From: Perna viridis
Taxonomy: Eukaryota
Assembly (NCBI GenBank): GCA_037379345.1
Contig: CM074522.1
Location: 4,402,001 to 4,466,000, forward strand
Length of the DNA stretch: 64,000 nucleotides
Reading direction: 5' to 3'
Shown: in pieces, positions 267 to 31,604 of the stretch
Layout: every line of letters starts with the position of its first letter
Numbering within the stretch: position 1 is the stretch's first letter
Program-made: the position numbers and the translations under genes
Notes under the pieces: model-generated
Databases searched by the model: none
Told to the model about the DNA's origin: nothing
What the model saw: only the letters and a program-made list of their open reading frames with translations

Positions 267-1286
267 CTAGTTTTCAGTCTGTTTTGGATTCGTCGATCTC
301 TGCTGCACCCTTATGACGTTTTGCTGAATATCAACTTCAGAAGGCAATATTGAGTTTTTGCATGGTTTGAAATATTTCACGTTTTCATATAATAATGATC
401 GAAAAGACTTGATTCTAAGAAGATAGATAAAAGGGTTAAGTACGGAACTTAAACCGGCGAATAAAAAAGTCGCGTTCCGAAGATACCTCGATGACGTAAT
501 TTTCGATACATACCCGTCTTTTAAGTACACTACAGCCAGCGGAGTATTACATACTAAATATAAAATTGCTATTAGTCCAGTTGTTACACAAAGTTTCACA
601 TCTGATATTTTAATCTGTCTGGTTGCATTTTCTCTAAGTCGTAAATTGTATCGCAAAAGAAATTGAAGAAGAATTCCCATAGAAATAAAAACTCCGACAT
701 GAGCTAGAGCAAAAATCAATCCGAACAAACCGTAAGCTTGTCTTTTATTATCTCCAAACATTTCATCAAATGAACATTGAACATGTGTCTTATAGCTAGT
801 TACATGCGTACATCCCATAATTATTGAAATAAGTACCGCTAAAGTCCAAGACACGACAATAATTGATACTGAAACTTTATTCCGTTTCATCCTTATATTT
901 GTAGCGTTAAAGCACACTACCAACACCCTGTCCAGGCAAATTGCAAGAACTTGAAACATAGAGGCCATAAATGTTATCGCTAAAATAAAACAACGCGTAT
1001 AACAATTTGCAAAACCCATTTCCGTTCCGCTTAATGTGTCAGTAACAAGTAACCATGATATCCCAAGAAATGCGTCTGTAAAACTTAGGCTAAGAACATG
1101 CATATATCCTAATTTTGTTTTCCTCCAAAATGAAGCAATGACAATAAAAATTGAAGGAAGATTTACACAAATGGTTGCTGTCCCAAAACAGTAAAGTACT
1201 ACTTGAAATATAACTGGAACCTTTTTGGTCGATGTCAGTATTATTTCCTTGTCAGTACTGTTTGTAGTATTTAAAATATTTTCCAT
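267..1286 (-). CDS. Class A (rhodopsin-like) orphan GPCR, single coding exon, ~339 aa
   Basis: Seven hydrophobic segments with TM1 N (ICVNL), TM2 LSFTD, TM3 Cys and DRV (DRY-like), ECL2 Cys (QCSF), TM6 CNTP and TM7 NPFIY, plus N-terminal N-glycosylation sites (NTT, NST). Likely start is MENILN at 1286. The track's extension to 1412 runs through an (AT)n repeat that lies in a probable 5' UTR intron (donor GTAAGT ~1499, acceptor CACAG ~1334). Confidence 0.88.
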   Translation of the reverse strand: MENILNTTNSTDKEIILTSTKKVPVIFQVVLYCFGTATICVNLPSIFIVIASFWRKTKLGYMHVLSLSFTDAFLGISWLLVTDTLSGTEMGFANCYTRCFILAITFMASMFQVLAICLDRVLVVCFNATNIRMKRNKVSVSIIVVSWTLAVLISIIMGCTHVTSYKTHVQCSFDEMFGDNKRQAYGLFGLIFALAHVGVFISMGILLQFLLRYNLRLRENATRQIKISDVKLCVTTGLIAILYLVCNTPLAVVYLKDGYVSKITSSRYLRNATFLFAGLSSVLNPFIYLLRIKSFRSLLYENVKYFKPCKNSILPSEVDIQQNVIRVQQRSTNPKQTEN

Positions 1287-1360
1287 ATCCAGCTTGGTGG
1301 AATTATGACAAAGCGCTAATCCGCTAACGGTAGCTGTGGTATATATTTTATGTATGAAGT

Positions 1361-1362
<2 letters not shown>

Positions 1363-1402
<40 letters not shown>
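1363..1402. repeat. (AT)n microsatellite
   Basis: About 19-20 uninterrupted AT units. Confidence 0.95.
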
Positions 1403-1405
<3 letters not shown>

Positions 1406-1689
1406 GAAACATTCACTAACAGTTCGATAATTAATCAAAGTGTTCCTAGATATTTAACTGCCCTATACGTTCGACTGTTTCAGTTAACCAAACACTTACT
1501 CTAAGAATGATGTTGTTGTAGGTGAATGAGTTACTTGATGTTCAGGTATATATTTCAGATTTTTATAACGATAATCGATTTCACACCTCTTCATAGAGAT
1601 GCCAACTATTTAGTAGACTGAGTTTGTATGAAATTATCACAATTATCAGCATTCCATACAAAGTAGTGCAATTACATAAAAAGAGTATT

Positions 1690-12516: not shown

Positions 12517-14476
12517 ATGAACAGCAAGGTTGTAACTACCATATTAGTGATTACCGTCACTGTTAGTGGAATATTCGGACAAGAGGCTTCATCTGCAGTA
12601 TCTAGTAGTAGCAGCCTGTCATCTAATGCAGCACCAGTGGCTCCTAAAATGAGTCCTGCTCAGCTGGCCATGATGCGTAGCGCAATGACACGACGTAAGT
12701 TCACACTACAGCTATGATCGATGAAATCGAAATCTAGATTAAACAATGAATAACAAGACTGATATTCAAAACTCGAAAATAAAATTGACAAAGACGAATT
12801 AGCCAGAAAATCTAGAAAATTGCAAGCAAAGGTCACTTGATGCTCCCCTCCCCAGAAATCATATGAGAAACCCAATTAGTCTTTTAGATGGAAAGCAAAA
12901 TGGTAGGTGCCAAAGGCATCAGAAAATGAAGAACCTGAAAAAAAGTCTCATTAAATTCCATCAGCTGTTGTAGAAAAAAAACTGCTGAAACTGGGGACAG
13001 ATGGGCAGCATAATAACTATATACCTCCTGCTTTTCGGCTGATACAATGAAGTATACAACTACAATGATATCCATGTAGACAAAAAAGTAGGAAAATATT
13101 CTAAATTCGGAATACAAATTAAATTCTATAGCACGAACAAATGCACCAGTTGAATAGCTAGGCATTCTCCGTTTATAGAAAGACCCCAGGGGTTGCGTTT
13201 GTAAAGCCCAGTAAGTATGATTGTAGCAGAAAATGCTGATAAAATGAATAAATCTATTTCATCTCCCTGAATAAATCTATATTTTTAAAATCTAACTGAA
13301 AGAATCAATGTAGCAGACATTTGATAATTGGCCAATAGTCACAAGGAAAGGCGGTGCTTGAATATATCAACGCATATTTAAAGAACTAAAACCACGATGT
13401 GCATATACATGTATTCATTAAATAAAATGAACCTATTGGAAATGTAAGAATGAAAACTTATTTGACTTGAAGCTTTGTTTTTTGTTTTTGTTTTTGTTTT
13501 TTTAATCCAGATGGTTTTAAAGCTGTACACCCTCAATTCAGTTCATTTTAGGATAAATTATTTCTATAAAAACTCTGAAATGTGAAATGGTGATTTAAAC
13601 CCACTTACTTCTATTAATTAGCTTAAAGTGCAAATCGGATATTTGTTATGGTCACATGTCTAGTAAATATATATTAATAAATATTTGTTTTTTCTTTTTG
13701 TTTTCGTTTTTATTTTATTGTAAGCTAAAACAAAATTTATTTATCAAATGAGGGCACTTTCCTTTCAAAGAGCTACAAATGTACATTTTAAATAAAATGA
13801 AAGCATTTATTCAACTTGTCATATTAAGGCAACATCATTGTAGTAGTATCATGATTCATTTGACATAGACTATTAAGTGTAAGTATTTGTAAGAATCAGA
13901 CACCATGGGAAATATCAGAAATATGTATGTCAAAAACCACCGATCTGACAATATGATTTCACTCATGAATGTTTTCTCTATTTGAAAAAAAAATTATTTG
14001 ATTTCTGTATCACTGGATTTGCTCAGAAATTGTTCAATAGTATGTTAGAAAAATGAGGTTTTTGACAGTCTTAGAGTTATCTTCCCTTGAAATATTCATT
14101 TTCAGTGCAGATCAATGAAATTATAACTCATTACACCAACATGATATGGAATATTTTGTCCTTTTCCTTGATTCTCATGGTGCAAATAGTCAAATCAAAC
14201 TTTCAAAATGGTGGGTTTTTCATGCCGTGTTTCACCCACTGCCTGAATCATACAAAGACTGACACTGAAAATCAATAAACTCAAAGGTATATATATTGTG
14301 TATGACTTGTAACGTAATACAGAGATTTCCCTTTTTCAGGAGCGCAATCCGCACAGCAGCGTCCCCGTCAAAATCCCTTCATAAAAATGATGTTGATGAG
14401 ACAACTCTTGTCAGGAGAAATGGAAGGAGGACCCCTTATGACAATGATGCTTATGAGAGGACTGGGATTGTTTTAA
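12517..14476 (+). CDS. Small secreted Met-rich protein A (104 aa); coding exons 12517-12694 and 14340-14476
   Basis: Acceptor TTTTAG just before the ATG, donor C|GTAAGT at 12695 and acceptor CTTTTTCAG|G at 14339 give a phase-1 in-frame join: MNSKVVTTILVITVTVSGIFG-QEASSAVSSSSSLSSNAAPVAPKMSPAQLAMMRSAMTRRAQSAQQRPRQNPFIKMMLMRQLLSGEMEGGPLMTMMLMRGLGLF*. Signal-peptide-like N-terminus, AATAAA at ~14730, and similarity to genes B-D. Confidence 0.85.
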
Positions 14477-17309
14477 ATAGAACTTAAAAACTAAAACCGA
14501 CTATAAAACTGCCGATTTTTAGTCAAACTGAAATTGCCAGAAATAACCTAGATAATGAGATAATTGAACGTTTTAAACATATATCCAGGTTTCTTACTAA
14601 AGCTTTTTGTTGATGTCAACATGTAGAACGATAATTGTTTCAATTTTAACGCATATCGTGGTATGCTAGATTTATTCCATCATAATCCAAAGTATTTATA
14701 GAAAAAAATATTGTTGTACAATATTTCGAAATAAATTATAATAAATTTCAATTTAGTGACTTAAGTATTCCGATTGTTTATTTTTGTTGAAATATATGTT
14801 CTGTTTTTATGCTAGCATAATCCTAAAGTTTTGCATTCTTTATTGATACTTTTTTTTTAAAAAAATCTTATTGTGTTATTCTAACGGCAAAAATGTGAAC
14901 GTAATTGATTTTGAAACAACTTCACATAAAGTTTTTTTTTCGTTTCTTTTGTAGTCGTGCCTGAAACTCAAAAGTAACATTAAAATATATTCGTCTAAAT
15001 GGTCCTGTCAAACTCGCAAGAAAACTTGGCCTGTCAAGATTACATTCTTAAGATTTGTTAATGTTTCTTAAATTTGATTTTGGACAAACGGCCGAACAGA
15101 TAGAATCAATAAAATATCATCTGATCTTTTGTAATGTGTTGGGGACGTAATGGTGTTGTCGTACCTGATTTTCGGAGTACTTTTTACTTTGTAGGTTTAT
15201 AATTCTTTTTAGTTCAATTTTTTAGTTAATTTCAATTCCATAGTGTTTCGCATCTTATTTTCGTCTGTGTCATTTTGATGTTCATAGTTTTGTTTCGTTT
15301 CCATAGCATTATCATTGTGTCTTGGTATTTGCCGAGGTTTCATTTCTTCCAAAAACATAGCCTAAACGTGAACACGTGACACAAAGACTATCAGCATACA
15401 CATGGTTGAGAACCGCATAAAACAGATTACGAATTAAAAAAAAATGAAGACCAATGAAACAAGACGTTACATAAAAACTAAACCACTAGCCATATAAACT
15501 GCCAAAAACTATCGGGATTGACATAGGGTGCTCCGGAGAATAAGCATGTCCTACCCCGCCAGCAGCGACCGTAACATTGCGAAAAAGTATAATCCGGTAA
15601 TAGTCCAGCAGCAATAATGCAGCTCCCTGACACGAGTCATAATAAAGTCCCGTCTAAACAATTCACAACAGCTCGATTTCATTCAATTTAAGGAGGAATC
15701 ATGATGTAAACCAAGTAAAAAATGCGGAAATGGTCAAATAAAATTAAGAGGAGATCACTGAAAAATAAAAAAAAATAAAAAGCAGACTTGTTTTTTTTTA
15801 AGAATATTTCGGATAAGTTTTAGTAACTTCTGCGTTTTGTTTTGTTTTGTTCTTTATTGGTTTTGTTTTTGTTTTTCTTTGTTTCTTTTGTTTTGTTTTG
15901 TTTTTTTTTTTTGGAGGGAGGGGGACCACCAAGAGCATTTATTTATCTTTGTTTCATTAACTTCAAACATGACCTTTTAATGTTATTTACCCTACCAATG
16001 CACCTGGTAAATGATAAATACTAACAGCTGTTCTTTTAGTTTTAGTTATCCAATTTATTTGATATATAATTTTTTAATTTAATATTTATATCTTTTAAAA
16101 ATTGTTATATTCATCTTTTTCTCATACAGCCCATGTCCATTGCGAGTTTTAGGTGTTTTTATTTTATTTTCAAGCCTCGGTGATAATTGCTGTATACATG
16201 AAAATCAGTACGAAGGTGTAAATTATCTTTCGATAGATATCTTTTTTTTTAGTCTGACACCCATAAAACAAACAGCAAATTTTATGTCATGTTTTTCATG
16301 CGCCTAGTTTTCAGTAGAGTTCATTACTCATCAGTACTCTCGCCTGACAGGAGGTAGTTTGTTGATTCATATAGATATGTTAATCATTATTAATTATTTT
16401 CACATTTGTACCTCATTTGTGCCATTCATTTGACTACGACTCGATTACAAAAAACTGTCTAATTCATATTTTCCTATTTGAAAAATTTCGTGCGCGTCCT
16501 GTGATATTACAGGAAATCTTTCAGCAGATATTCCATTACTATTTTATCATATTGAGAACAAAAAGACGTGTTCAGATTTTCCTCATAAAGTTCTTTAATT
16601 AACTTACTGCTATAATAAGAGATGTAAACATTTGAATACTTTTTTTTCTTTTATCATTTGAGGTAATCTATAAAACATAAATTGCAATCTTTAGGCAAGA
16701 AATCAATAGATATGTCATTTCAGAAACGCGAGTACATTATGTTCATAAGATGAACACTATATGAAATTATGAATGTCATTTAGGGAATTTGTCCAGTAAT
16801 ACAAATAAAACGAGAATGGATATGGTGAGTATATCAAAGCAACAACAACCCCATTGGGATGAAAGGATTGAGCTCAAGGCCTACCACGTGTCTTCAATGA
16901 ACGACAAAGAAACCTTCACACCACAGGGCAGGCTTCAGCTTGTCCCAAAACAACAAGTAGATCGAAATTGTTGCCCTTAAGGCTGTTTTTGCAGTGGAAA
17001 AAAACAGAATATTAAATACGTTTTTATTGTTTTAATGTGCTATATTATTTGTATTTACATAAAAGGGCATTTGTCAGAGCTTTTAACAGCAAAAATATAT
17101 ACATGTACTACTAACGTAAGTAAGCCCTACGACATGTACTGTATGAATATAATAGAAGTTTTAGACATCAATTAAATACTGTTATTTCTAATTAATAATA
17201 TACAGTTACGCAATGCAAGATAGTTTGTACCTTTAGAATGTGGATGCTAGTCTGTACATGAAATGCGCTACCTCTGAACAAATATACACCGTATACACAT
17301 ACAGGCAAA

Positions 17310-18791
17310 TTATCCTTGCATTAAACTTCTCATGACGAAGAATAAAGCAGGACCCTCTAGCTCCGCCTCTTGTATAAGATACATCATCATCATAGCTTTC
17401 ATCATGTTGTTTGAATTTTTACCTGTAAAATACTATAAGCATTCAGTAATTCACTAGGATTAAAATATTGCTTCTAGCCTATACCTAACAAACCCATAAG
17501 ATCACAAAAAGTATGGGCTCCTAAAACTGTCATACTGGTAATCTGGAAATGTTCAGTTGTTAATCGGGTGGCGTAGACAGTTTTGACCATTTACTGCAGT
17601 TACTTGTTACCCTTTTATAATAAAATCTTGCTTTCACTTTTTTCTTATATTCCTCTCATCTGTGGCAACATCCCGTCGGCACCTGCGTATGGAGTTTTCA
17701 TAGCACAAGTCATACGTTATGTCAGAACTTGCCGTGACTAAGCAGACGTTTTGTATCGCGCTAGACTTCTTACGTTTTAGTGAAGTCTGAGTTACTCATT
17801 TACTTTGTTACTTTGTATGTATGAGTTTTGTTATTTTATGTTATTTGTTGCGTGAGTCTGTTTCCCATGTCTGGTCTTTGTCCTTGGATTAAATTCTTTT
17901 GATTTCCGCTAAAACATTTGTTTTACTTGATTACTTGATTACTCTTTCAAACTGCAATTCTTTATCGGAATATTTAAAAATTATATAATAAACTCAACAG
18001 CAAAGCTGAAAAGGAAGAATAACACTTTAATCAGAGAAAAAGAAATAAATTAAATGTGGAAGGAAATTAAATAGAAGGGCGTTGTCTTGTTACCCACACC
18101 ACTTTGTCTTCACTCCTCTTACATCTGTTGTTAAAAATGGTATTTTTGCTGGTTTGTTGTTAATATTAAGCACACTCAACTTTACGTTATGAATGAAAGT
18201 ATTCAGTGACTTTCCAGAACAAATCAGTTTAATTACTTTAATTACAGATTGAAATAGAATCGTGGCTCTCGTGATTACCCTTAGATATAGGTTACCCATC
18301 GATTATATACTATTTCGAAAGCAGTATGATTCACAAACAGGTCTTCTGAATAATAAGTCTACTTTATAAATTAATCCATATGCCAAATTATTGAAGATTT
18401 GATGCAGAGTCTTAAGAGAGGATAGCTTAAATCACCGGTGAACCTGGTCTATGTTCCAAGTTTAAGTGGTGTACGGGTTGCTCATTTACTCTTGTTACCA
18501 TATGCGCGTTGTTTTTGTAATTTTATGTTGTTGCCACGGAATCCCGGTTCTCTTGATTTTTATTGCATAGATTTTACCTTGATTGAGACCTCTTTGGATT
18601 GTTTTGACTATTGCCCGTTTCTGAGCTGCTGTTGGCCCTTTTCTTGGAGGTGGATTAGGTCGTGCTTGTGTCTGGTTTGTCGAGGACGCAGTAGCCGCAG
18701 TCTGACCCCCAGGTGCTGCTGTTTTTTGGCACAAAGCACACTGCAGAATCGCCACAACTAACCCAAGTATTATCAATGTTTTCTTCCCCAT
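17310..18791 (-). CDS. Small secreted Met-rich protein B (108 aa); coding exons 18791-18578 and 17422-17310
   Basis: Acceptor TTTGCAG just upstream of the ATG, donor AG|GTAAAA at 18577 and acceptor TTTTACAG|G give a phase-1 join: MGKKTLIILGLVVAILQCALC-QKTAAPGGQTAATASSTNQTQARPNPPPRKGPTAAQKRAIVKTIQRGLNQGKNSNNMMKAMMMMYLIQEAELEGPALFFVMRSLMQG*. The last exon aligns with that of gene A. Confidence 0.85.
17650..17945 (+). mobile_element. Internally deleted Penelope-like fragment in the intron of gene B
   Basis: CATCTGTGGCAACATCCCGTCGGCACCTGCGTATGGAG...GATTACTCT matches the 21173-21886 and 59195-60163 copies. A further short 3' fragment lies at ~18420-18560. Confidence 0.8.
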
Positions 18792-18837
18792 GTTTAACTA
18801 CAACTGCAAATTAGTCAGAACATATTAGTGATATATC

Positions 18838-18973
18838 TGGGCCCGATTTCATGAAAAATCTCAAACTGATATTTTCCTAAAATCCTCAACTTAAATGTTG
18901 ACCAATCAAACCGCTTGAAATTGAAGATATGAGAGAAATCTCAGTTTGAGATTCTTTTATGAACCCAGGCCTG
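18838..18973. mobile_element. Small MITE (~135 bp)
   Basis: About 33-bp imperfect terminal inverted repeats: CTGGGCCCGATTTCATGAAAAATCTCAAACTGA and TCAGTTTGAGATTCTTTTATGAACCCAGGCCTG. Confidence 0.7.
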
Positions 18974-19920
18974 ATTCATGTATTACCTATGATGTCAACG
19001 CTTTTTATACCCTATCTATGGTATTGAGTCTAACGTGTCAAAAGTTATCAAATATTGTGTGATACAAAGTTTTAACAGTGAACTTTAAAATAGTTTATGC
19101 CTTGGAAATTTTCAGGGTTCCTTCGAAAATATGATTGCATTCCAATTTTTTCCTTGGGAATTTATTCATAATCATATATAGGCAAAAAGACGCAATTTCC
19201 CTATTTTAAAACCTATTTTTGTACTTCCTATAGAATTTTGAAATGTTCTTCGTTTTGTGATTTAATGAAATGGTGTATATGACACATTCATTTTAGCATT
19301 AATCGTTTATATTACTCGTACACGTTTATATAAATAATTGACAAACCCTCATAAGGAGCGTTAAAGATGGAATTATTTATTCCAAAACTCAATGTTTGAA
19401 TTGAAATTTTACGTTTGATTTTTCTTTTGCATTTGTTTTTGTTTTGGCCTTTGCTTTTTTATGGTCGTGTTTTGTTGTTGTTATTATTGTTGTTGTTGTT
19501 TTGAGCTGAACTTTACATGTATTTAATGTAACGTCGTTATGACATATTGCACAGATAAATAAGTTTGTTTATATAAACCTTTTAAATCAGTATAAGATTT
19601 AAAAATCGTACTCTAAAAACGTTATAAATTGTTTATTTTACTAATAGCAGATGATATATTTATTCGTACTAACCCCATTCAGATAAAACTCTCGTTATCA
19701 GATGGGGATTTGGTGGACTCCAATTCAGATATTTCCCATTGTTTGATTTACATATATACCATATGTTTTGTCCCAATTTTTTAGGGTGGAATATCGTGCA
19801 ATATATCATTACATATAAGGCATGATATATAACATTTAACAACGTAATAACATGTACATGCTAGTGAACAATGTTATGCAAATAAGATTTTTAAATAAAG
19901 CTAGAAGCTGTTAAGAATCC

Positions 19921-20042
19921 TAGGCGCGTAGCTGCCGTTAGGCAAAAAAGCTTTTGCCTGCACTTAATGTTGCCTTAAGTGGCCCCCAGACCCCCTGCCG
20001 TAATTTTGCCTACACTTCAATTTGGCCTCAGCTACGCGTCTG
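19921..20042. mobile_element. Small hAT-like MITE
   Basis: TIRs TAGGCGCGTAGCTG and CAGCTACGCGTCTG. No clear TSD. Confidence 0.55.
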
Positions 20043-20607
20043 AACCCAGATAAAATGGAGTAGATATAACCCTGTCCTTAAAAACTAAAGAATAAACTCA
20101 AATTGAATTATTTAGAATTAAATAAAGATGCAATATTGTAAATGTATTCTCTTATTACTTTCAAACACTTTAGCGCGCCACTTTTTTGCAACTTGGTGGC
20201 TATCTTAATTTCCGTCTAACAGTATCTAAATAATGTACTCTTTCATATAGAAACTAATTCACGGAGATTCGCAAAATTAGCGAAAATTAAGTTGGTTTGT
20301 AATAGTAATTTCAGAGGTTAACATTACACATTTTTTCTTTCATTTTTTTGGAAAAACATTCCTACCTTTCTTTCCCTTATTTGTTACTCCGACAAATAAT
20401 CAAAATTAATACCATAAAACAATGATATATTTTTTCTGGGACAACTTGTAACAATGTTTGTTTCTGTATTAAGATCACAGCTGTAATATATCTTAAAATG
20501 ACCACTGGACATTGCAGTTAATTCCAGATTATGTGTTATGTGTGGGTGATATATATGTCAACGTTACGGAAATATTTGATGTGTTATTTTTTTGTCAGTC
20601 ATTATAC

Positions 20608-20703
20608 CGGTTGTCCTTGTGAATTAAAGAACAGTACACGAATATCAGAATTCTGGATTTTATCAAATGATCGAGTTGTTGTTATTTTAGACAACTATTT
20701 ATA
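20608..20703 (-). promoter_or_regulatory. Candidate promoter and non-coding first exon of gene B
   Basis: On the minus strand: TATAAATA (20703-20696), TCATT initiator at ~20668 and donor CCG|GTATAA at 20607. The 35-bp spacing is slightly long. Confidence 0.35.
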
Positions 20704-20909
20704 AATCATATGTTATGTCTATTTCTATGGTTTCTTCCCATCTTGCTATCTTTTAATGTTGACAATACCCCTGAGGAAAAAAGCAGTTATTTCACGACAG
20801 AAATTATGAATTTCCAGAGAAAAACAGAACAAACTGAAGACCTATAAGTAAATATCATTTATTCAAAGTATTTCTTTCATACAAGAATGTAAAATGCCAA
20901 TCTTCTTGG

Positions 20910-21023
20910 CAAACTTGACAGTTCTAACATCGTTGGGAATTTTTCAGACCTTTCTATACGTTTACGTTATCTTCCCTGTATCAATTTGATCCAATAGAGC
21001 AGTGTAGCGAATAGAGTCGTCAT
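20910..21023 (+). mobile_element. Partial copy of the tRNA-containing element at 61599-61973
   Basis: Reverse complement of ~61599-61712 (TTGACAGTTCTAACATCGTTGGGAATTTTTCAGACC...GAATAGAGTCGTCA). Confidence 0.8.
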
Positions 21024-21172
21024 ATATCATTATAATAATTTACCATAATACTGCAACAAAGCAAGTAATGGTAAAAAAATCGATGTGCATATAGGATTTG
21101 TCTGGTTTCTAAATGGTAATTCTCTTCATATAGAAACTAATTCACGGAGTACATTATTTAGATATAGTTAGA

Positions 21173-21886
21173 CGGGGATTTGATACAACGCGTCTACCCA
21201 AAGGAACTTGAGATAAAGGATACTACAGGGGCTGTGAAGTCGGCCTCATATCTTGACCTACACTTGGAGATCGATGGTAAAGGAAAACTATTGACCAAAC
21301 CTTACGACAGACGTGATGACTTTTCATTCGGAATTGTCAACTTTCCTTTCATCTGTGGCAGCATTCCTTCGGCTCCTGCGTATGGAGTGTTCATATCACA
21401 ACTCATACGTTATGCCAGAGCTTGCCGAAACTACGCAGACTTTTTGTATCGCGCTAGAACTCTAACAAATAGTCTTCTGGAACAAGGTTATGTTGCTACA
21501 AGATTGAAGTCATCACTACAGAAGTTTTATGGTCGTCATCATGAACTCGTGGATCGTTATGGTGTATCCATCAGCACCATGAGAACTGATTTATTCAACG
21601 GGTCATAGTTTTCCTTTCCTCGTTTGTCTACCCCGGACTAGACTTTTTATGAGCAACTCGGCGGGTGTTTCTGGAAAAGCAGAGGACGCTTACCCTACCG
21701 GTGCACCTGGTCCATGCTCCCAGTTTTAGTGGAGTCCGAGTTGCTCATTTACTTTTGTTACTTTGTATGTATGATTTTAGTTGCTTTATGTTATTTGTTT
21801 TGTATGTCTGTTTTCCATGTCTGGTCTTTGTCCTTGGATTACATTCTTTTGATTACCGCTATAACCTTGGTTCCCTTGATTACTCT
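21173..21886 (+). mobile_element. 5'-truncated Penelope-like retroelement (RT C-terminus plus 3' end)
   Basis: ORF 21180..21608 (YPKELEIKDT, SYLDL, PAYGVFISQLIRYAR) is near-identical to 59456..59884, which is joined to GIPMGTNCAP and YIDD RT motifs. Confidence 0.9.
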
Positions 21887-22624
21887 TAACAGTCAATGAC
21901 ACACATATCATTTGTATTGCTGTACATTGTAGTGTCCATGCTAAGAAAAGAAAACCAAAGGATTGTTTGTTTCAAAGGGTGACTGCTTTACCACCTTGCA
22001 CAAAGAATTTAAGGAGATAGACCAAGCGTAAGAGACATAACTCTTTAAATCAGTGATATGTTTATATCATATTCAATTTCACCAAAGTCTTTCAAGCTTT
22101 TCTTTGACACAGAATGAAATCAGTCCAAGTTACTTTGATGCTTACATAAGATTGATACAAAATAGTAAATACAAACGTTCCAATAATATTTAAGAGTTGT
22201 GTCCCTTACTCTAGGTCTACCTCCTTAAGGGGATAGAGTTATGACAAATGAATAAAAATAAAAATGGTGAATACAACCATTCCAATGATTTGTTAGAGTT
22301 GTGTTCCTTACCCTAGGTCTACCTCCTTAAAGATGATGATAAAGTCTTGCCAATTGAGTCATTGTATTCGATTAAGGTAAACACAACACGTTTTCACAGA
22401 AAACAGCAAATATAAATAATCGTGCTACATTTGCTTTTATGTTGCATGTCATTGTATAAACTCGTATATTCAGCGAATCAATTTTAAAATTGACCCATTG
22501 GCATTTTAAGTTTTGTTCACAAAGATTCTCAACAGTTGTTTTTGAATGAGCATCACAAAAAATATTTTTAATAAGTAACTTGTAAACGACAAGAACATAA
22601 CATAAATGTGCATCTTGTAAATAA

Positions 22625-22836
22625 CTAGAAAAGCAGAGGACGCTTACCCTACCGGTTCACCTGGTCCATGCTCCCAGTTTTTAGTCCGAGTTGCTCATTT
22701 GCTTTTGTTACTTTGTATGTATGATTTTAGTTACTTTATGTTCTTTGTTGTGTATGTCTGTTTTCCATGTTTGGTCTTTGTCCCTGGATTACATTCTTTT
22801 GATTAGCACTATAACCTTGGTTCCCTTGGTTACTCT
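22625..22836 (+). mobile_element. Penelope-like 3' end fragment
   Basis: Matches 21671-21886. Confidence 0.85.
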
Positions 22837-25800
22837 TCCAACAAAATATGTCAGCCAATCAGTGCATCCAATGTCGCATTGCAACAGTGAGAATGGTATA
22901 ATTTAGTTTAAAATAACTAGATGTTTGATTTGATAACGTATTTTGTCCATCATCTGATAGACTTAGTTTTGTAATGTGACTGTAATGTCAATAACTCTTA
23001 TGATGATGTACTCGTAAAATTTTGATATTTGAATAAAATTATATGGAATTACTGTTTTATATTTTTTTCTGTCTCTTTGAGGCACACTTGAAAATAACCT
23101 GCATAGATTATATTGTGTGTACCACGTGATTGAGATTATTTCTTCATATACCGAAAAAATACATCGGTCATTCCTTATCGATTGTAAAACTGTTACTGAC
23201 ACATTTACAATTTTCTATAAAGGAACAGCTGACAGTTTCTACGGTTTTATGACGGTTATATAATCCAGGTATATCAAATTCAAATTTCCTCTGACATGAA
23301 ACATATATTTAGCTTCCATGTGCACATGGCAATTTAAATGATAAATTGATGCTGAACTCATTCATCAAAGTTCAAGGTCACCGTTACCAAAGATAGAGTT
23401 AAGTATTACAAGGGAACTAGAGCACTTCTTTTATATTAGTAACTTATTTCTGGTCGTTTCCAGTCAACTATATCCTCTATTTTTTTTTATTTTTGCTTAT
23501 TTGACCATTACTTGGAAAATACTACGAGTTTTCTTACAAATTTGTCAGTGCATCATAAGCCTCAGTGGCGAGCCGTAAAATTTGTGTGTTGTCGCAAAAT
23601 TATACATGCATAGGTTGCATTTTGATAAAACATTCATTAAGGAAACCCAGAGTTTCAACTAAGTAAAGCATTGGAACATGGATGTAAATGTACTATTTAT
23701 GATTTATCAAAAAGATTTAATACCAAAATGAATTATGTGTATGGATATACATTGCTGTTTCAAACTTTACTATACTAACACAAATTTCATTTTCGAAAGA
23801 TATTTTCAACTTTTATTATTTTTCTTAAATGATATAATCGTTGTGTTTTCGTCAAGGTTTCTCATTATGTATAATGATACCTTGTTAAGCAGATTATTTT
23901 TAGCTTTGCGTCACTTAAAGTTTGTAAATGTCCATATAAAAAGATGTTACCAATACTTTCTGCTAAATAGAAACAATAATCATTCAATTTGTTACGGCTT
24001 TTCTATTTTACAAAGTGAGTACTACCGATATCTAACACGACAAACTGTGAGCCATGCTTATTCAATGATTTAACTGGCGCCATGTTGTAAATGATGTGGT
24101 CAAATTCAATTTACAATTATGATTTTAAAGTTGCTCTGTTCTGACATCGCATCCAACGATAAACTAAAATAAATCTTCTCTCGAAATATCTGGTACCTGT
24201 ACTTAATAGTTAAAGACAAAACTGTCAGAAAATATTGTGCTTCAATCATATGTTCAAATGTCTTCAAACAGGAATTGCTCGAGACTGACATCGTATCCCA
24301 CGATTTGGCATTCACATATAAAGCTTCTCTCAAAATATAAAGTGGTTGTAATAAATAGTTGCAAAGAAATCAGTACCGAAAATATTACAGACTTACGAAA
24401 GGACTGACAAAACCCAGGATCACTACATCCCGTCCATTTTAAAAGCGGGGTAAATAAGAAGTTATTTGACAATTGTTAAACATACATATTTATAGACTTT
24501 GAAATACAATTTTGCCGTGTAAAAGGATTTTCAATTTTAACAATTTTGTACTTATATATTCAAACTTTTTGTCAATTCGGTTTTTTTTTTCAAACCTCTT
24601 GAGATCGTGGAAAAAACAAATAATATAAAAACACGAAATTTAAAGGAAAAAGATAATTTAAGAAAACAGTACATACATATTGACCGGCTGCATGATGCTG
24701 TCATTTCAAACAGTAAACTAATTAATGTTCACGAACGATTTATGTTCGCTTATGTTGCGAGTAAGATTAAATCGTCGCGAAAAAGTGTTTTATAGTATAA
24801 ATCATCTTTGAAAAATGTTAATTGCGAAATCAGATAACTGCGTTAATGAATTGACATCCCTAATCGCGAAAATAAGTATCCACGAAAAAAAATGGTATAA
24901 AGCAACTAGATCTCACTCAAAGACTGAAGTAATCTTGAAAAGCCTATATGGAACAAGGATAGGGATCAAATAATATATACATGTACCACGACTATATTGT
25001 ACAAAGCGAAATCCGAACGACTTAATATAAGTCTGATATATGGCGCATATTATTTCAATTGATGAAGAATTAAAGAAACTCACATTGATCAATTGAATAT
25101 TGAATACGTTTACTGGATATAGCAATGTATTATCAGATTAACCCAAATAATCTTGGAGAATAAAAACATTAATGGCGCATTATTCACGCCAAAACAAAAA
25201 CAAAGCTCTTGACATATTATTTCAGGTATTTGACTAAACATTCCTGATGAACAGCTTTTTCAACATACATGCACTTTCTATGTATGAGAACGAAATAAAA
25301 CAAAACAAATATAGTCATAATTTAATACCATTACACAGTGACCATAACCATTTTGACAAATTTTGTGAGGTGACAAATTTTTTTTATCATTGTTATGTCC
25401 AGTAGGTGACATTGTCTTAATTGTCATGCTTTGTAATGTCACTCCACTGCAAAAACTAATATCTTATGTCTTACCTCTTCAAATGATTAAATCCTGAGAG
25501 TCATACGAAAGTCAAGTCGAGGTTACATATTTATATATATCATTTACTATGATGCTTTTAATCAAAATGTCGTGTTATAAGGTAAAAAGGGAGTAAAAGT
25601 CATTTTTCTTCCCTTCGATGTCTGTAATGCTAGAGAGGTGAGACGCATTTGACTTCAGATGCAAATAAATCATAACCTTTCGTGTAGGGGTTGATTCAGG
25701 TCATGAATTCGTTGCTGTAGATGTCGTGAACGATTTTGTTATGCATAATACAGAAATGTTTTAATTTTTGTTACTTACATTCATATTGTCTATGAAAATA

Positions 25801-26429
25801 TTTTATGTGACGTGCAAAGAATTAGAATAAATTTGAATTATTTCTGCGTGTGATTTGCCCATTAAAATATATTTGGAGTAAAATTGTAAAATGTATATAT
25901 AAAGTGTTCTTAAGATGCAATTGTTCAGCATATATCACTTTTATAGACACTATATTTAGTAAACCCCGTCTATTGGTAACTTGACGTTTTTTTCGGTTAA
26001 CGGTAACAAAAGAATGCTTGGCGGGGATATTATATCTTTCTTTGTAAAATCATGATGAAATGACTCTCTTATTTTCCATCAGTCCATCTTCTTAAATACG
26101 CTTCATGTGGATTAAAGGATCACCACGAGCATAGAATAGCCGATGATAGCATTGGTGATTTAACTGTTGGTTGTAATATCGACTAGCATATATTACTAGC
26201 ATATATATATGGGTTTCAGCATATATTGTTTATGGTGGAAGTGCTAACTGGAATAACCATTTGAGATCTTCAAATGTATTTTGATTTCTGGGTGGTTGTG
26301 TATGCTTCGGGTAAATTATCATTATCATTTTAAGAACCACAGCCATTAAGTATACTCTGAATCCAACGCGCGGAGTAACATTTCAATCAAAACATATGTT
26401 TTATTTTCAAGTCGTTATTAAAGAACACT

Positions 26430-26515
26430 AGAATAAGTAATCAAGGTTATAGCGGTAATCAAAAGAATGTAATCCAGGTGCACCGGTAGGGTAAGCGTCC
26501 TCTGCTTTTCTAGAA
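26430..26515 (-). mobile_element. Internally deleted Penelope-like 3' fragment
   Basis: Reverse complement joins ...GGTGCACCTGG directly to ATTACATTCTTTTGATTACCGC..., consistent with a deletion between CCTGG microhomologies. Confidence 0.8.
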
Positions 26516-27832
26516 GTTATCCGATGGTTTTGTGTGAAACATTGGAAGACCATCACACACATCTGGAAAACTATTTAGTTAATTTTGTGGGAAATCGGAA
26601 TGCCGTTTCTAAAAGCAAATTATTTATGTTCAAAGATTAACAGGTTATTACATAAATGACCTGTATAAAGTCGGGATATCTTTCACGAGTTGGAGAATTT
26701 GAAGTCTTTTTAATCAGTGCAGCCTAGGGAAAGAGAGAAGACCAAGAGCTTCTCTAACGACCTAAAACTGATATTCGATCTTCAACGAGAATAAGTACCT
26801 ATTTCTTCATCGAAAACATATATTCTCCTAGAGAGCGCCACCATTTCTGGAAGCATAGTATACAGCCACAAATTTTATCTTTCCTTTGTTTTGAAAATGT
26901 CTATGAGCTGCTACTTTTAATACGTTTCATTGAGTAAGTGAATGAGTTAAGACGTACTTGCGTGACCTCTTACGTGGGACGTCTCAACTCGAAAAGGGGT
27001 CATTTCCTGAAGAAACTAGCAAGTCTTCAAATCGTTCTCTAGTTAAGGTTTGGGGGCAAGTGAAGTAAGATAAAATAGACAGACCGGTGATTTGACAGTG
27101 AAATTTAGAATATTTTTAACAACTCCACTATGTATATGGTGTTGTCATCACTACAGAACTTTTATGGCCGTCATCTCATGGATCGTTCCGGTGTATCCAT
27201 CTGCACCATGAAAACTTTTTTGTTCAACGTGTCATAGTTGTAATTTTTCCCCATGTTTTTTGTTGAATAAACTAGGATTGTGTTGTTATCCGCATACAAA
27301 TTTTGAGATATTTACTGTTTGTATATACAATTGTTAGGAGTGACGAATCAAGAGGAGGGTAAGGTCCATATTTTTACTGGAAAACTTCGGTTGATTAAAT
27401 AAAAAAATTACTAATCGTGACCGATATGCGCCCTGCTTATCAAAATGTCTGGATCCTCCCTAGGCCAATGCCAAGAATTGGATTTATCAAGTCGAGTCTT
27501 TTTTCGCTAATCATTAATCGGCGAAGGAACTACATTTAGTTATTTAATAAGGAATACCACTCATTTATTTGTCCAAAACAAATGATGAAGTAATGGTCTT
27601 TTTCTATAAATTACTTTGCTACGGAAAGTAAGCATTCAATCTACACATATACATATATCATTTATTTTCTAAACAAAAATAAACAACATTATATTTTCAC
27701 AATACTATTTGTTAAGTTGTAGCGTTTGTAAGTTTTTAAGATTTTGATTTCAAATTGACAGAACTTGTCCCTTTCTTTGTTGTGATATATTCTCGAACAA
27801 AAGAATCATCAAGGGAAAAATTCATTTAAGTC

Positions 27833-28898
27833 TTACACAAACATCCACCAGAGGGCGTCCATATCTCCTCTCAATAACATGTATAGTGACACTGGATCCA
27901 ATGTTGGTACTGAAACAGGGACAATATATGTAGTTGGACTGATTTGACTACAATCAATATGTTGTTGTCTTTAGTTTATCTTTTGTGTCTTACTAATAAG
28001 CTTTTTGTATTTTTATCTGTACTATTTAGAAAATCATGCATTTATCTCCCACTAAAACCGACCAAATCAAAGCAAATCAAGAACGATAACAACTCTTGCA
28101 AAGTGCTTATTTCATGTAAATCTATATAATTTTTTTCTCAAAAGAGCAACACCCAAATGAAAAACTAAGGTTATTTATGTGGTCTGTAACTGATTCTGAA
28201 CAAGAAATACAACTTAATTTGTTGGGTGTTTGACATGCATGAATCACCTCCTGTCTGAGTTTTGTAAATGATACTCATCTGATTCTTTCAACTTTTCGGT
28301 GTTGAAGTTAGCTACCTGTTTTTATAAAATTTTGGTTTTGAGTACTTCTTATAAACTATCTACTTAAAGATTTAGATTTCCCTTTATATTTGGTTCTAAT
28401 TCTACTCATGAGAAGTTGATCCGTAAAACATGTGTACAGCATATCGATATTTGCAATTTTAGTATGATCGAAAATTTCTGTATCTGTATTTTGTATTTAC
28501 CAAACAAGAGATGAAACTTTTGTTTTAAATTTCAAGTTAGAAAAGTGCTCCTTTGAAACGGCTTTTTACAGGGTTTGTAAATCTACTGTTGAATCATACA
28601 AAACCGATTACTGGTTTGTATTTAGTTTGCTATTCCCGGGTACATTAACATAGAGCACATTCATCAGTGACAATGTTCTCATTTAAATGTGGGAAACTCT
28701 AAATTCCGAGAAAAATGGCCGAATAAAGCATTTACCTGGTTCTGGAGTTGGTTGTGGTGTAACGGTAAGACCACGTCTTTCACTTAAAATTCTTCGAAGT
28801 TCGGCAACTTGGTCGGGTGCTATTCTTGCTGAAGAACATCCAAATAGACAGAATGTGATCAACAGTATTTTCAGGGTGGTAATTTTTCTTGTTTCCAT
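27833..28898 (-). CDS. Small secreted protein C (79 aa, contains RGD); coding exons 28898-28736 and 27909-27833
   Basis: Acceptor TGCTTTAG upstream of the ATG, donor CAG|GTAAAT and acceptor CCCTGTTTCAG| give a phase-1 join: METRKITTLKILLITFCLFGCSSA-RIAPDQVAELRRILSERRGLTVTPQPTPEPVPTLDPVSLYMLLRGDMDALWWMFV*. AATAAA at ~27666-27661. Clear paralog of gene D. Confidence 0.9.
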
Positions 28899-29294
28899 TG
28901 TAATGCCAACTTATGCTATTGTTCAATTTCCTTCTTTGTTTATCTAAAGCATAAAAAAACATAGTACTCCAAGAATACATCCGAAATAGATAGTTTTGCT
29001 ATGACGACGAGAAATTTTGATGCATGTAGATAATAGACATTAATGTGACCGAACGAAAAATATCTGTATAGAATATTGCATGGAGATGATAATTTTAATA
29101 TATGTTTTTCGTAAAGGTCGACTTTCTTTCAAAATAAAATATTCTTTTTAAGTAAAAAAAAATAATTTACTGTAGAATATACAATGTAGTTATAATATGT
29201 AAATCCTACATTATCTACAGCCTGTATATTTAAAGTTATGTGAAAGTTAAAAGTAAAAAATATTTATATATATATATTTAAAACTATTACTTAC

Positions 29295-29371
29295 TATAAA
29301 TATTCAAAGATCTGCTTCGTTTGTCGCCAATAAATGATGTGCAAAATTGTAACAAAAATTTAAATATCAAA
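29295..29371 (-). promoter_or_regulatory. Core promoter and 41-nt non-coding exon 1 of gene C
   Basis: TTTGATATTTAAA (29371-29359), with TATTTAAA starting 31 bp upstream of the A in a TCATT initiator (29335). Donor GTAAGT at 29294. Confidence 0.65.
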
Positions 29372-30516
29372 TTACACGGTTAGTTTTCCTGAAGCTAATA
29401 TTGAAACTGTCAAAACATAATAATTGATAATAATTTATAGATATCAATTGTCTTTTTATCTGACAACTCCTCTTTATTGTTTTCAAAATAAAAAAAGTAT
29501 ATACATGTATATCATATCAGAGCAATAGCTTTAAGCCATTAATACATGTACAATCAATCTACCTATAATGAATTATTAATAATATGTTAGTATTGTCTGT
29601 GTATACGGTTTGTTTTCTATATGTTTTACTTGAGTTACCCCGGCGTTTTGTACAAAGAATTCCTAATGTTTGAATCTAAATTATTTTAGTATTGTTAGAC
29701 CATTATACAATTATGGCAATATTGTCAAAGATAATGAAGTAACACTTGAATAGGAGTAAGACATATTTTCAGAAATATTCTAATACTCATAATGTTTTGA
29801 ATTGTCCGAACCCTATCACATATCTCCACTTCCAATCACCAATGCAACATAATATTCTTGGAAATAACTTGGAAAAATACAGAGAAGGGTCAAATAAAAG
29901 TAAGAATAAAAATGTCTGATTATACAAGATTCTAAATGTTTCGCATAGACTAATTGTGTGTAAACTTGGAATAAAAGTAGACGCACGCGTTATGTCCGTG
30001 ATGTGATGATGGTTTCCTCGAGATACACTGAAGACCCACAGGTGGTCTTTAGCTGACTTTTTTTTCATCCCGGTGGAATAATTACCTCTTTAACACATTC
30101 ACCATACCCATTCTCGTTATATTGTTGTGTTATGTAGAGATTACTACCCTGTTACTTGCTATCACTTCCAATTTTCTTGACCCCTCAAGTGGTTAACGTG
30201 ACTAGACCTTTTATGTTGTTTTTTATAGTTTATTTTATTTTTTTCATGTCTGAATTAATTTGAACGAACTGTTTATAATAAATATTTATTAGAACAGAAT
30301 ACAATTCATAACGCATGCATCACTATAAATATAAGTAAATATAAAAATTAACAGAAAATTAATTCTAGTGTTGCATTTAAAAAATAGTCTACATCTTAAG
30401 ACGATTTTTTTTTTCTTATATAAATGAATATAGAATGGCATATATATATTATACAAACAAAATATATACAATTTCTACAGTATTCGTAGTAAATAATGTT
30501 CCCTTTAACATCCTTT

Positions 30517-31297
30517 TTATAACAGCAGCCACCACCACTGATTGTCTATATCTCCTCTCATTAACATATATAGAGCCATTGGATTCATTGACGGTTCTAC
30601 AAGGATATAATTATAGCAAAATTAAACAAGTAGGATAAAATATGATTTTTTATTATGTTACATGCATATAAGATTTGCTGTTGACCGATTTGTTTGTGAA
30701 TCGGGGGTATCCATTACTGAGCTTTACTCTTTTTTTCTAGTTTTATGATATTTATTAGTCAGCTAAACATAATATTAAACCTGTTAAGTTCTTACATGTT
30801 TTTCCTCATATTTACAATTTCATGATCTACTCTTACATTAAACACTTAAAATAATAGTTCTTTTGCGTTTGTTTCTTTGTTTGTTTTATTCATATGTTTT
30901 TGTCTTGTTTTGATAAGGCTTTTTTCCTGTTTGTTTTTTTTACTCTTGATAACACTGCAATGTAATGTTCAGACAGAGCAAGATTTAAAGCATTTGGTAA
31001 ATGCGTGTTGTTGGTCGGTTCGAAGTTATGACGTATATTGACAAGTGGAAGGGTTCATCAAAATTATATATTGAAAACATTTAAAGAGCATCCGGGCAGA
31101 AAACGCTTTTAAACTTAGATGACTGTTGTAATACTAGTACCTGGTTTTGGAGTCGTCGTGGGTATTCCGGATATACCAAACCTTTCCCTCAATATATCTC
31201 TCAGTTTAGTAACCTGGTCTGCCGAAAGTTGAGCCGATGTTCTTCCAACCATAGTGATTAGTAATAAAACCAGTAGTGATGATCTGAAGCTTTCCAT
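30517..31297 (-). CDS. Small secreted protein D (78 aa, contains RGD); coding exons 31297-31141 and 30596-30517
   Basis: Acceptor CAATTTAG upstream of the ATG, donor CAG|GTACTA and acceptor TCCTTGTAG| give a phase-1 join: MESFRSSLLVLLLITMVGRTSA-QLSADQVTKLRDILRERFGISGIPTTTPKPEPSMNPMALYMLMRGDIDNQWWWLLL*. Paralog of gene C. Confidence 0.9.
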
Positions 31298-31604
31298 TTC
31301 TATATCCGTTTGTTACCTAAATTGTTAGAAATCATTGTTTATATTCAAATGTATGTTGCTTTATTGTTTTTTCCTTATATTTGTTTCTGTATTTATTTTG
31401 TAACAGTGAGACCAGTTTAAACCGACCATTTATCGGGAGGCATTCAGTTTTGGCAAGTGTTTGTTTTACTCAAATGGTCTTTAAAACTGATATACAGCGC
31501 GATTTCTCATCATGATTGCGCAAAGAAAATATTAGGTTAATGCCTGTCTGAATTAAATAAGTTCGAGTCAGCTGATAAACTCAGTGGTTAGACTAGTAGT
31601 ACGG

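What the first reader, a model, noticed from the sequence alone, without database searches (positions are those of the whole stretch)
12517..31297. Cluster of four homologous small secreted-protein genes of a family I do not recognise
Seen in sequence: four genes of 78-108 aa within 19 kb, missed as whole proteins by the ORF track because each last exon is under 50 codons. All have an acceptor just before the ATG, a signal peptide, an S/T/P/A-rich linker and one phase-1 intron before a hydrophobic last exon. Two motifs align across all four. The first is a helix-like motif: SPAQLAMMRSAMTRR (A), TAAQKRAIVKTIQRG (B), APDQVAELRRILSER (C), SADQVTKLRDILRER (D). The second is a tail motif: GPLMTMMLMRG (A), GPALFFVMRS (B), DPVSLYMLLRG (C), NPMALYMLMRG (D). 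The mature chains have no Cys, and A, B and D start with Gln (possible pyroglutamate). Inference: an old tandem-duplicated, lineage-restricted family of secreted structural or adhesive proteins. Low-complexity, Met-rich secreted proteins are known from molluscan shell matrices, so mantle, periostracum or foot/byssus expression is the leading guess. Novelty is unverified.
Basis: partly seen in the sequence, partly recalled or inferred. Interest (0 to 1): 0.88.

Follow-up and report, generated by a model that had tools for sequence, protein, structure and literature searches.

The report
Orphan secreted micro-protein gene cluster, mussel
A mussel chromosome carries a tandem cluster of four (probably five) tiny genes for secreted, cysteine-free, methionine-rich proteins with no detectable relatives; two are shown to be spliced and transcribed, and their function is unknown.

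Summary
The four gene models are in the sequence as described: A 104 aa, B 108 aa, C 79 aa and D 78 aa. Each has a signal-peptide exon, one phase-1 intron with canonical splice sites, and a short hydrophobic last exon.

RNA-like contigs from four studies carry the exact D junction, and one run carries the exact C junction.

C and D are certain paralogs. Their similarity is confined to the exons, with dN/dS about 0.3 and dS above 1. A is significantly similar to B, C and D in shuffle tests. B is not directly similar to C or D, and a C+D profile does not recover A or B. The single-family claim is therefore probable, not proven.

A fifth member lies 20-28 kb upstream of the window.

Pfam, PDB, two very large protein libraries, metagenome contigs and the rest of this genome gave no relatives.

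The gene layout matches that of the mussel myticalin/modiocalin antimicrobial-peptide genes, but the protein features that define myticalins are absent.

A structural or adhesive role is unsupported. I favour secreted bioactive or membrane-binding peptides, with low confidence.

The scan has not noted this family on other DNA.

The parts
12517..12694 (+). Gene A, first coding exon: signal peptide, Ser/Ala-rich stretch, helix motif ending in Arg-Arg; donor C|GTAAGT, phase 1. A possible acceptor (TTTTAG) ends at 12509, 8 nt before the ATG.
   Evidence: Sequence and translation. No RNA test. Genomic Logan contigs L026/L027 are collinear and unspliced.
14340..14476 (+). Gene A, last coding exon (acceptor TTTTTCAG|): basic stretch, then two Met-rich hydrophobic segments around a GEMEGG turn, then the stop codon.
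   Evidence: AlphaFold2 on this exon with the 5-sequence alignment gives two helices (residues 12-24 and 31-41) at mean pLDDT 70. 54-57% identical to the exon of the fifth copy.
18578..18791 (-). Gene B, first coding exon: signal peptide, Thr/Ala/Pro/Gln-rich stretch, basic helix motif; donor CAAG|GTAAAA, phase 1. An alternative phase-1 donor lies 12 nt upstream.
   Evidence: An allelic variant (P0002, two amino-acid changes in the exon) sits on genomic Logan contigs. No RNA test.
17310..17422 (-). Gene B, last coding exon (acceptor TTTTACAG|): Met-rich segment, QEAELEG turn, second hydrophobic segment, then the stop codon.
   Evidence: Reciprocal best weak match with A's last exon within 204 kb.
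28736..28898 (-). Gene C, first coding exon: signal peptide, helix motif ending in Arg-Arg, Thr/Pro linker; donor CCAG|GTAAAT, phase 1.
   Evidence: A contig of run X6 joins 28736 to 27909 exactly (table 8, record 16).
27833..27909 (-). Gene C, last coding exon: PTLDPVSLYMLLRGDMDALWWMFV, then the stop codon.
   Evidence: 80% DNA identity to D's last exon, starting at the acceptor.
31141..31317 (-). Gene D, exon with the ATG (31297): short 5'UTR part, signal peptide, helix motif, Thr/Pro linker; donor CCAG|GTACTA, phase 1. The exon begins at an acceptor at 31317, and a further 5' exon exists but was not placed.
   Evidence: RNA-like contigs of X1, X5, X6 and X7 all end or begin pieces at 31317 and 31141, with 44-145 further letters upstream (tables 5 and 8).
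30312..30596 (-). Gene D, last exon: coding part 30517-30596 (EPSMNPMALYMLMRGDIDNQWWWLLL and stop) plus at least 205 nt of 3'UTR. AATAAA at 30285-30290.
   Evidence: Junction 30596|31141 in four runs of four studies; contigs reach 30312. Poly(A) signal scan.

Best explanation
This is a tandem cluster of a taxonomically restricted family of very small secretory-pathway proteins in a mytilid mussel. All genes share one layout: untranslated 5' exon(s); an acceptor a few bases before the ATG; one exon with a cleavable signal peptide, a variable low-complexity stretch and a short basic helix motif (often ending in a dibasic site); a phase-1 intron; and a short last exon. The last exon encodes the best-conserved part: two short Met/Leu/Trp-rich hydrophobic helices separated by a Gly-acidic turn. 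Shown: the gene structure, splicing and transcription of C and D, purifying selection, and the absence of detectable relatives. Inferred: the proteins are secreted (and O-glycosylated on the Thr/Pro linker in C and D), and the conserved C-terminal hydrophobic hairpin is the working part, binding membranes or hydrophobic surfaces. A, B and the fifth copy are strongly cationic, so they would be host-defence-like, membrane-active peptides. C and D are neutral and present an RGD at the hairpin turn. I put about 0.8 on 'real, coding, secreted orphan family' and about 0.3 on the membrane- or surface-binding bioactive-peptide mechanism.
For: Gene models and motifs. Exact C and D junctions and D's 5' acceptor in RNA-like contigs of four studies. 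C/D similarity is limited to the coding exons, with dN/dS about 0.30 and dS about 1.35. A versus the fifth copy: 54% amino-acid identity but only 51% nucleotide identity, with saturated synonymous sites. Shuffle tests link A to B, C and D. The exon-2 alignment shows a shared N-P-x-x-x-(M/Y)-M-L-M-R ... G-(D/E)-x-(D/E) pattern. AlphaFold2 gives a two-helix model of A's last exon. Net charge is +6 (A), +8 (B), -1 (C) and 0 (D); Met is 5-15%; there is no Cys. The same three-exon layout, with a UTR-only first exon, an intron just before the ATG, a phase-1 second intron and tandem clustering, is described for the mussel myticalin/modiocalin antimicrobial peptide genes (PMC5577615 section 2.2; PMC12294457 section 3.2).
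Against: There is no functional or tissue data. Transcription and splicing of A and B are untested. Helix amphipathicity is not above shuffled controls except in B. C and D are not cationic. The dibasic site is present at the aligned position only in A and C. The homo-dimer prediction gave no verdict. Four-way homology rests on A as a bridge, and the C+D profile does not find A or B. Signal peptides were judged by eye, not by SignalP.
Confidence: 0.5

Rival explanations
1. These are secreted structural or adhesive matrix proteins of shell, periostracum or byssus. The hydrophobic tails would drive assembly and the low-complexity parts would form the material.
For: The proteins are small, secreted, Cys-free and low-complexity, come from a tandem family, and Met-rich shell proteins exist in molluscs (papers listed). 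RGD is conserved in C and D.
Against: The composition is unlike known mussel foot or shell-matrix proteins: few Tyr, Gly or Lys, and no acidic or repetitive blocks. The proteins are only 55-87 residues when mature, with no repeats. The contigs carrying C and D have low depth in all four runs (a weak measure, tissues unknown). dN/dS of 0.3 on short specific motifs suggests a specific interaction rather than bulk material.
Confidence: 0.12
2. These are peptide-hormone or neuropeptide-like signalling precursors. After signal-peptide removal (pyroglutamate N-terminus) and cleavage at the dibasic site, a short helix peptide and/or the C-terminal peptide would act on a receptor.
For: The precursors are small, with a predicted N-terminal Gln in A, B and D. 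RR follows the helix motif directly in A and C, and KR is present in B. Conserved short motifs are separated by variable linkers. Apparent expression is low. B ends in Gly, a possible amidation signal. A rhodopsin-family receptor gene lies 11 kb from A, which is only proximity.
Against: D has no dibasic site. There are no repeated peptide copies and no conserved Gly-basic amidation signal. There is no match to any known neuropeptide family in Pfam or the protein libraries. The hydrophobic Trp/Met-rich C-termini are atypical for neuropeptides.
Confidence: 0.2
3. There are two unrelated (or only convergently similar) families side by side: A/B/fifth copy (cationic, Met-rich) and C/D (neutral, RGD, Trp-rich). 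The shared motifs would be chance plus shared composition.
For: A C+D HMM scores A and B no better than shuffles. B versus C or D is not significant. The order of linker and helix motif differs between the pairs. tblastn of D's last exon ranks A's exon only fifth in 204 kb.
Against: A-C (p=0.0005) and A-D (p=0.0045) local alignments are collinear over both motifs. The A-only HMM recovers C and D (2 and 5 of 1000 shuffles). Exon layout and intron phase are identical, and the genes are adjacent.
Confidence: 0.25
4. A and B are not real genes. They would be chance ORFs with chance splice sites, or decayed copies, and only C and D are functional.
For: There is no RNA evidence for A or B. The only database entries are unspliced ORFs called on genomic contigs.
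Against: Donors and acceptors are perfect or near-perfect and the phase is compatible. A's last exon is conserved at the protein level with a second copy, although the DNA is saturated. A-B similarity has z=6.1 over the full length. Reading frames are intact and AATAAA lies 250-280 nt after the stops.
Confidence: 0.12

Closest known systems
Myticalins (Mytilus) and modiocalins (Modiolus): linear, Cys-free antimicrobial prepropeptides of mytilid mussels (PMC5577615, PMC12294457)
   Same: Both are mytilid-restricted and Cys-free, with small secreted precursors and tandem clusters within a few kb. The gene layout is identical: the first exon is UTR only, an intron lies just before the ATG, the second exon carries the signal peptide, a variable central part and (in A, C and B) a dibasic site, the second intron is phase 1, and the last exon encodes a conserved C-terminal part. 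Apparent expression is low.
   Different: There is no Pro/Arg-rich, pI>11 central peptide. The C-terminal part is hydrophobic and Met/Trp-rich rather than a D/E-rich anionic extension. D lacks the dibasic site. No sequence similarity was detected in the word-index search. Myticalins were reported absent from Perna viridis transcriptomes (PMC5577615 section 2.3). A direct sequence or profile comparison could not be run here.
Mussel foot / byssal adhesive proteins and molluscan shell-matrix proteins (for example Met-rich nacre proteins)
   Same: Both are secreted, low-complexity and lineage-restricted, and often occur in tandem families. Some shell proteins are Met-rich.
   Different: These proteins are much smaller. 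They have no Tyr/DOPA-, Gly-, Lys- or Asp-rich blocks and no repeats. Conservation is concentrated in two short motifs. There is no evidence of gland-level expression.
Classical neuropeptide / prohormone precursors
   Same: Shared features are a signal peptide, a possible pyroglutamate N-terminus, dibasic sites in some members and small size.
   Different: There are no repeated peptide units, no conserved amidation signal and no match to any known peptide family. The C-termini are very hydrophobic.

Membership tests
Myticalin/modiocalin | Three exons; exon 1 is 5'UTR only; the first intron ends just before the ATG | tested here: met
   For D, RNA-like contigs start the ATG exon at 31317, 20 nt before the ATG, and continue into an upstream exon. 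A, B and C have polypyrimidine-AG acceptors 8-47 nt before the ATG, seen in sequence only. The feature is as described in PMC5577615 section 2.2.
Myticalin/modiocalin | The second intron is phase 1, shortly after the dibasic site, and the last exon encodes the rest of the C-terminal region | tested here: met
   The intron is phase 1 in all four models and in the fifth copy. The C and D junctions are confirmed. In A the intron directly follows RR.
Myticalin/modiocalin | A central mature peptide that is highly cationic (pI>11, >10% Arg, usually Pro/Arg-rich) | tested here: not met
   The regions between the signal peptide and the dibasic site are Ser/Ala/Thr-rich (A, B) or a neutral 16-residue helix (C). 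Whole mature chains have charge +6, +8, -1 and 0.
Myticalin/modiocalin | An anionic, Asp/Glu-rich C-terminal extension of 35-75 aa | tested here: not met
   The last exons are hydrophobic and Met/Leu/Trp-rich, with only 2-3 acidic residues at a turn.
Myticalin/modiocalin | Detectable sequence similarity in the signal peptide and C-terminal region | tested here: inconclusive
   The word-index searches with all four first exons returned only this species' own ORFs. The exon-2 profile found nothing real in 1.84 billion representatives. No myticalin sequence was available by reference for a direct or profile comparison. The published signal-peptide consensus resembles B's by eye only.
Myticalin/modiocalin | Tandem cluster within a few kb | tested here: met
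   Four genes lie within 19 kb and a fifth lies 20-28 kb upstream. There is none elsewhere in the genome.
Mussel adhesive / shell-matrix proteins | Biased Tyr(DOPA)/Gly/Lys or acidic repetitive composition, and presence in byssus or shell proteomes | tested here: not met
   The composition test is not met. Proteome presence is not testable with these tools.
Neuropeptide precursors | Conserved peptide(s) flanked by dibasic sites, often with a Gly amidation signal, and expression in the nervous system | tested here: inconclusive
   RR is at the aligned position in A and C only, KR is elsewhere in B and D has none. There is no Gly-basic signal. Tissue is not testable.
Any Pfam / PDB family | A significant profile match | tested here: not met
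   No Pfam hit reached its cut-off for any of the eight exon peptides. The best PDB E-values were 0.15-0.9.

The most novel reading that the evidence does not exclude
The cluster is the 'missing' Perna counterpart of the myticalin/modiocalin locus. It would be an ancient mytilid secreted-peptide gene scaffold (UTR exon, intron before the ATG, phase-1 intron after a dibasic site, tandem array) whose cargo has been replaced. In place of a cationic Pro/Arg peptide plus anionic propiece, it would carry a Met/Trp-rich helical hairpin, with an RGD at the hairpin tip in two members. That would be a new class of Cys-free mussel effector peptides and a case of one scaffold evolving entirely different products.
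Probability: 0.15. Interest if true: 0.65.

Novelty: new variant of a known kind. Interest (0 to 1): 0.42.

Why it matters
Bivalve genomes are full of lineage-restricted small secreted peptide families, and very few have been described. The only known Cys-free one in mussels (the myticalins) was reported absent from Perna. This cluster gives a verified, transcribed example with the same gene scaffold but a completely different product. The product is short enough to synthesise and test for membrane, antimicrobial or RGD-dependent cell-adhesion activity. If it proves to be linked to the myticalin locus, it would show how such effector genes change their cargo. If not, it remains an ordinary orphan family that annotation pipelines miss because the last exon is under 50 codons.

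Tried and rejected
- Pfam on all eight exon peptides found nothing above cut-off. The weak DUF3446 and DUF1180 hits are low-complexity noise.
- Word-index searches of 5.8 billion proteins with D exon 1 and with the four-exon-1 alignment returned only unspliced ORFs of this species from genomic Logan contigs (P0001-P0003).
- The exon-2 profile against 1.84 billion representatives gave one hit, P0004. It is the translation of a 19-bp tandem repeat in a metagenome contig, so it is spurious.
- The ESM Atlas gave no usable hit for A exon 2, and only bacterial lipoprotein-like signal peptides (scores below 0.9) for C exon 1.
- PDB profile searches found nothing.
- In the metagenome contig scan with the C2/D2 alignment, 127 pattern matches were found and none was confirmed. 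The five-sequence alignment was too diverse to scan.
- Synteny by way of the neighbouring GPCR: orthologs at 65-69% identity exist, but only on 1.3-2.6 kb Logan contigs, which are useless for synteny. RER1 could not be used as an anchor because no exon is long enough for the length window.
- The homo-dimer prediction of A's last exon gave no verdict (score 0.00, controls not run). It is neither support nor evidence against.
- The amphipathic-helix claim: the hydrophobic moment is not above shuffles except in B, so I do not call the motifs amphipathic.
- Upstream regions of the four genes share no conserved block.
- An ad hoc scan for further 'acceptor-ATG-signal peptide-phase-1 donor' exons was badly calibrated, missing A, B and D, and was dropped.
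- Joined models were used only inside local scripts for alignment, shuffle tests and composition.
- Also left out: a full-text paper search for the motif strings, because these are typed letters without a reference.
- Read laying could cover only C and D (one call, 6 kb).


Full report
**What is there**

Reading the DNA around them gives four two-coding-exon models.
- A (+): 12517-12694 and 14340-14476, 104 aa.
- B (-): 18791-18578 and 17422-17310, 108 aa.
- C (-): 28898-28736 and 27909-27833, 79 aa.
- D (-): 31297-31141 and 30596-30517, 78 aa.

All four introns are GT..AG with good donors (GTAAGT, GTAAAA, GTAAAT, GTACTA) and polypyrimidine acceptors. All are in phase 1, and the joined frames are open to a single stop. 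The last exons hold only 25-45 codons, which explains why an ORF list shows only the first exons read through into the intron.

Each N-terminus looks like a cleavable signal peptide, judged by my own heuristic and not by SignalP. After the predicted cleavage the chains have no Cys, and A, B and D start with Gln. Met makes up 14.5, 9.2, 5.5 and 7.1% of the mature chains, and the net charges are +6, +8, -1 and 0.

**Transcription**

They hold 6-23% of the words, as expected for exons only. I laid four of them, from four studies, on 27500-31500.
- The junction 30596|31141 (skipping 544 bases, CT..AC on the + strand, which is GT..AG on the - strand) is in a contig of every run.
- The junction 27909|28736 is in one contig of X6.
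- D's ATG exon begins at 31317, directly after an acceptor 20 nt upstream of the ATG. The contigs carry 44-145 more letters that lie outside the stretch, so there is at least one untranslated 5' exon.
- One X1 contig is unspliced, from either pre-mRNA or DNA.

C and D are therefore real, spliced exactly as predicted. The only database records for them are unspliced ORFs on genomic contigs.

**Are the four genes related?**

C and D are certain paralogs, with 44% identity in exon 1 and 57% in exon 2. Their DNA similarity is confined to the two coding exons and stops at the splice sites. dN/dS is about 0.30 with dS about 1.35. This is an old duplication under purifying selection.

I ran local-alignment scores of the mature joined chains against 2000 composition-preserving shuffles, in a local script only.

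| Pair | z | p |
|---|---|---|
| A-B | 6.1 | 0 of 2000 |
| A-C | 5.8 | 0.0005 |
| A-D | 3.6 | 0.0045 |
| B-C, B-D | not significant | about 0.06 |

The A-C and A-D alignments are collinear over both motifs. In an HMM version of the test, a C+D profile does not recover A or B (253 and 184 of 1000 shuffles score as well). An A-only profile recovers B, C and D (1, 2 and 5 of 1000). Given the identical exon layout, intron phase and adjacency, I put about 0.75 on a single family.

The exon-2 alignment shows the shared pattern: N-P-x-x-x-(M/Y)-M-L-M-R, then a Gly-acidic-x-acidic turn, then a second hydrophobic segment. The RGD of C and D aligns with the SGE of A. It therefore arises from the conserved Arg of the first segment plus the conserved Gly-acidic turn, and it is not a family-wide feature.

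AlphaFold2 on A's last exon with this small alignment gives two helices at mean pLDDT 70. This is modest support for a helical hairpin. Hydrophobic moments are not above shuffled controls except in B, so 'amphipathic' is not established.

**A fifth member**

A's last exon has a 54-57% identical counterpart at G000:C12:4381840-4381956, 20 kb upstream of the window, with the same phase-1 acceptor. Nucleotide identity there is only 51% and synonymous sites are saturated, so the exon has been kept by selection.

About 8 kb further upstream lies a unique exon (C12:4373742-4373856) with three matching features: an acceptor directly before the ATG, a strong signal peptide and a phase-1 GTAAGT donor. 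Joining the two would give a 78-aa protein without the helix motif. This model is untested.

Six-frame searches of the whole 723-Mb genome with every exon found nothing outside this locus.

**Relatives elsewhere**

None was found in:
- Pfam;
- PDB;
- the 5.8-billion word-index library;
- the 1.84-billion representative library searched with the exon-2 profile, where the single hit is a translated 19-bp tandem repeat;
- the ESM Atlas;
- metagenome contigs.

These blanks are weak evidence. The exons are 24-71 residues, an ortholog at about 50% identity would fall below the thresholds, and no other mollusc genome could be searched.

**Organism and closest known system**

The genome size (723.1 Mb) matches the published Perna viridis assembly (723.49 Mb, PMC11358141). 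This is circumstantial.

In mytilid mussels the only described Cys-free secreted peptide family is the myticalins, with the modiocalins in Modiolus. Their genes are described as follows (PMC5577615 section 2.2; PMC12294457 section 3.2):
- three exons, with exon 1 being 5'UTR only;
- a first intron ending right before the ATG;
- exon 2 encoding the signal peptide, the mature peptide, the dibasic site and the first residues of the extension;
- a phase-1 second intron;
- exon 3 encoding the conserved C-terminal part;
- genes clustered within a few kb.

That is exactly the layout found here. The protein features that define myticalins are absent, however. Those features are a pI>11 Pro/Arg-rich central peptide and a D/E-rich anionic extension. 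The same paper also reports no myticalins in Perna viridis transcriptomes. I therefore do not file the cluster as myticalins. The shared scaffold is a lead that needs synteny and profile comparisons I could not run.

**Function**

Nothing here measures function. A structural or adhesive role is not supported by composition, and tissue information was not available.

The conserved parts are short specific motifs under purifying selection, the products are tiny, and three members are strongly cationic with hydrophobic Met-rich helices. On that basis I favour secreted bioactive peptides whose C-terminal hydrophobic hairpin binds membranes or hydrophobic surfaces. These could be defence-like for A, B and the fifth copy, and possibly RGD-presenting for C and D. 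A signalling-precursor role is the main rival. The dimer prediction gave no verdict.

**Verdict**

This is a real, previously unannotated, apparently orphan family.

Noticed in passing
L004:1507-1623 (+) and L014:1742-1855 (+), i.e. G000:C12:4381840-4381956 and 4373742-4373856, 20-28 kb upstream of the window: A fifth family member. The last exon is 54-57% identical to A's, with the same phase-1 acceptor. About 8 kb upstream is a unique exon with an acceptor directly before the ATG, a signal peptide and a phase-1 GTAAGT donor. Joined, they would give 78 aa without the helix motif. This model is untested.
   Followed up: partly
window 267-1412 (-): An intronless 381-aa rhodopsin-family receptor ORF (PF00001, 65 bits) lies 11 kb from gene A and is transcribed divergently. 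Relatives at 65-69% identity exist only on short Logan contigs. No link to the peptide genes is shown.
   Followed up: partly
window 28028-28268 (inside the intron of gene C): A short interspersed repeat is present at 90-95% identity in hundreds of transcript contigs of all four runs, with summed depth in the thousands and many different flanks. It is probably a SINE- or MITE-like element embedded in many UTRs.
   Followed up: no
window 21180-21608 (+) and 59456-59884 (+): Two roughly 90% identical 142-aa ORFs with no Pfam match. Fragments of the same sequence recur in the flanking 200 kb, so they are probably part of a transposable element.
   Followed up: no
window 18578-18791 (-) versus L024/L025: Genomic Logan contigs of the same species carry an allele of B with two amino-acid changes in the first coding exon (N39S, K63E). 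Overall DNA identity is 98.4-99.5%.
   Followed up: partly
window 42521-46275 (-): RER1 exons (PF03248; three matches of 38-62 bits). The gene's 3' end faces gene D, about 10 kb away.
   Followed up: no
window 30569-31170 (-): One contig of run X1 (602 nt, five differences) covers D's intron unspliced. It is either a retained intron or pre-mRNA, or DNA carried over in that library.
   Followed up: no
L028:2101-2434: The only hit of the 1.84-billion-protein profile search is an ORF across a 19-bp tandem repeat (17.6 copies) in a metagenome contig. Because 19 is not a multiple of 3, it translates into a 19-residue periodic peptide that mimics the YLMR...SGE...WW motif.
   Followed up: yes
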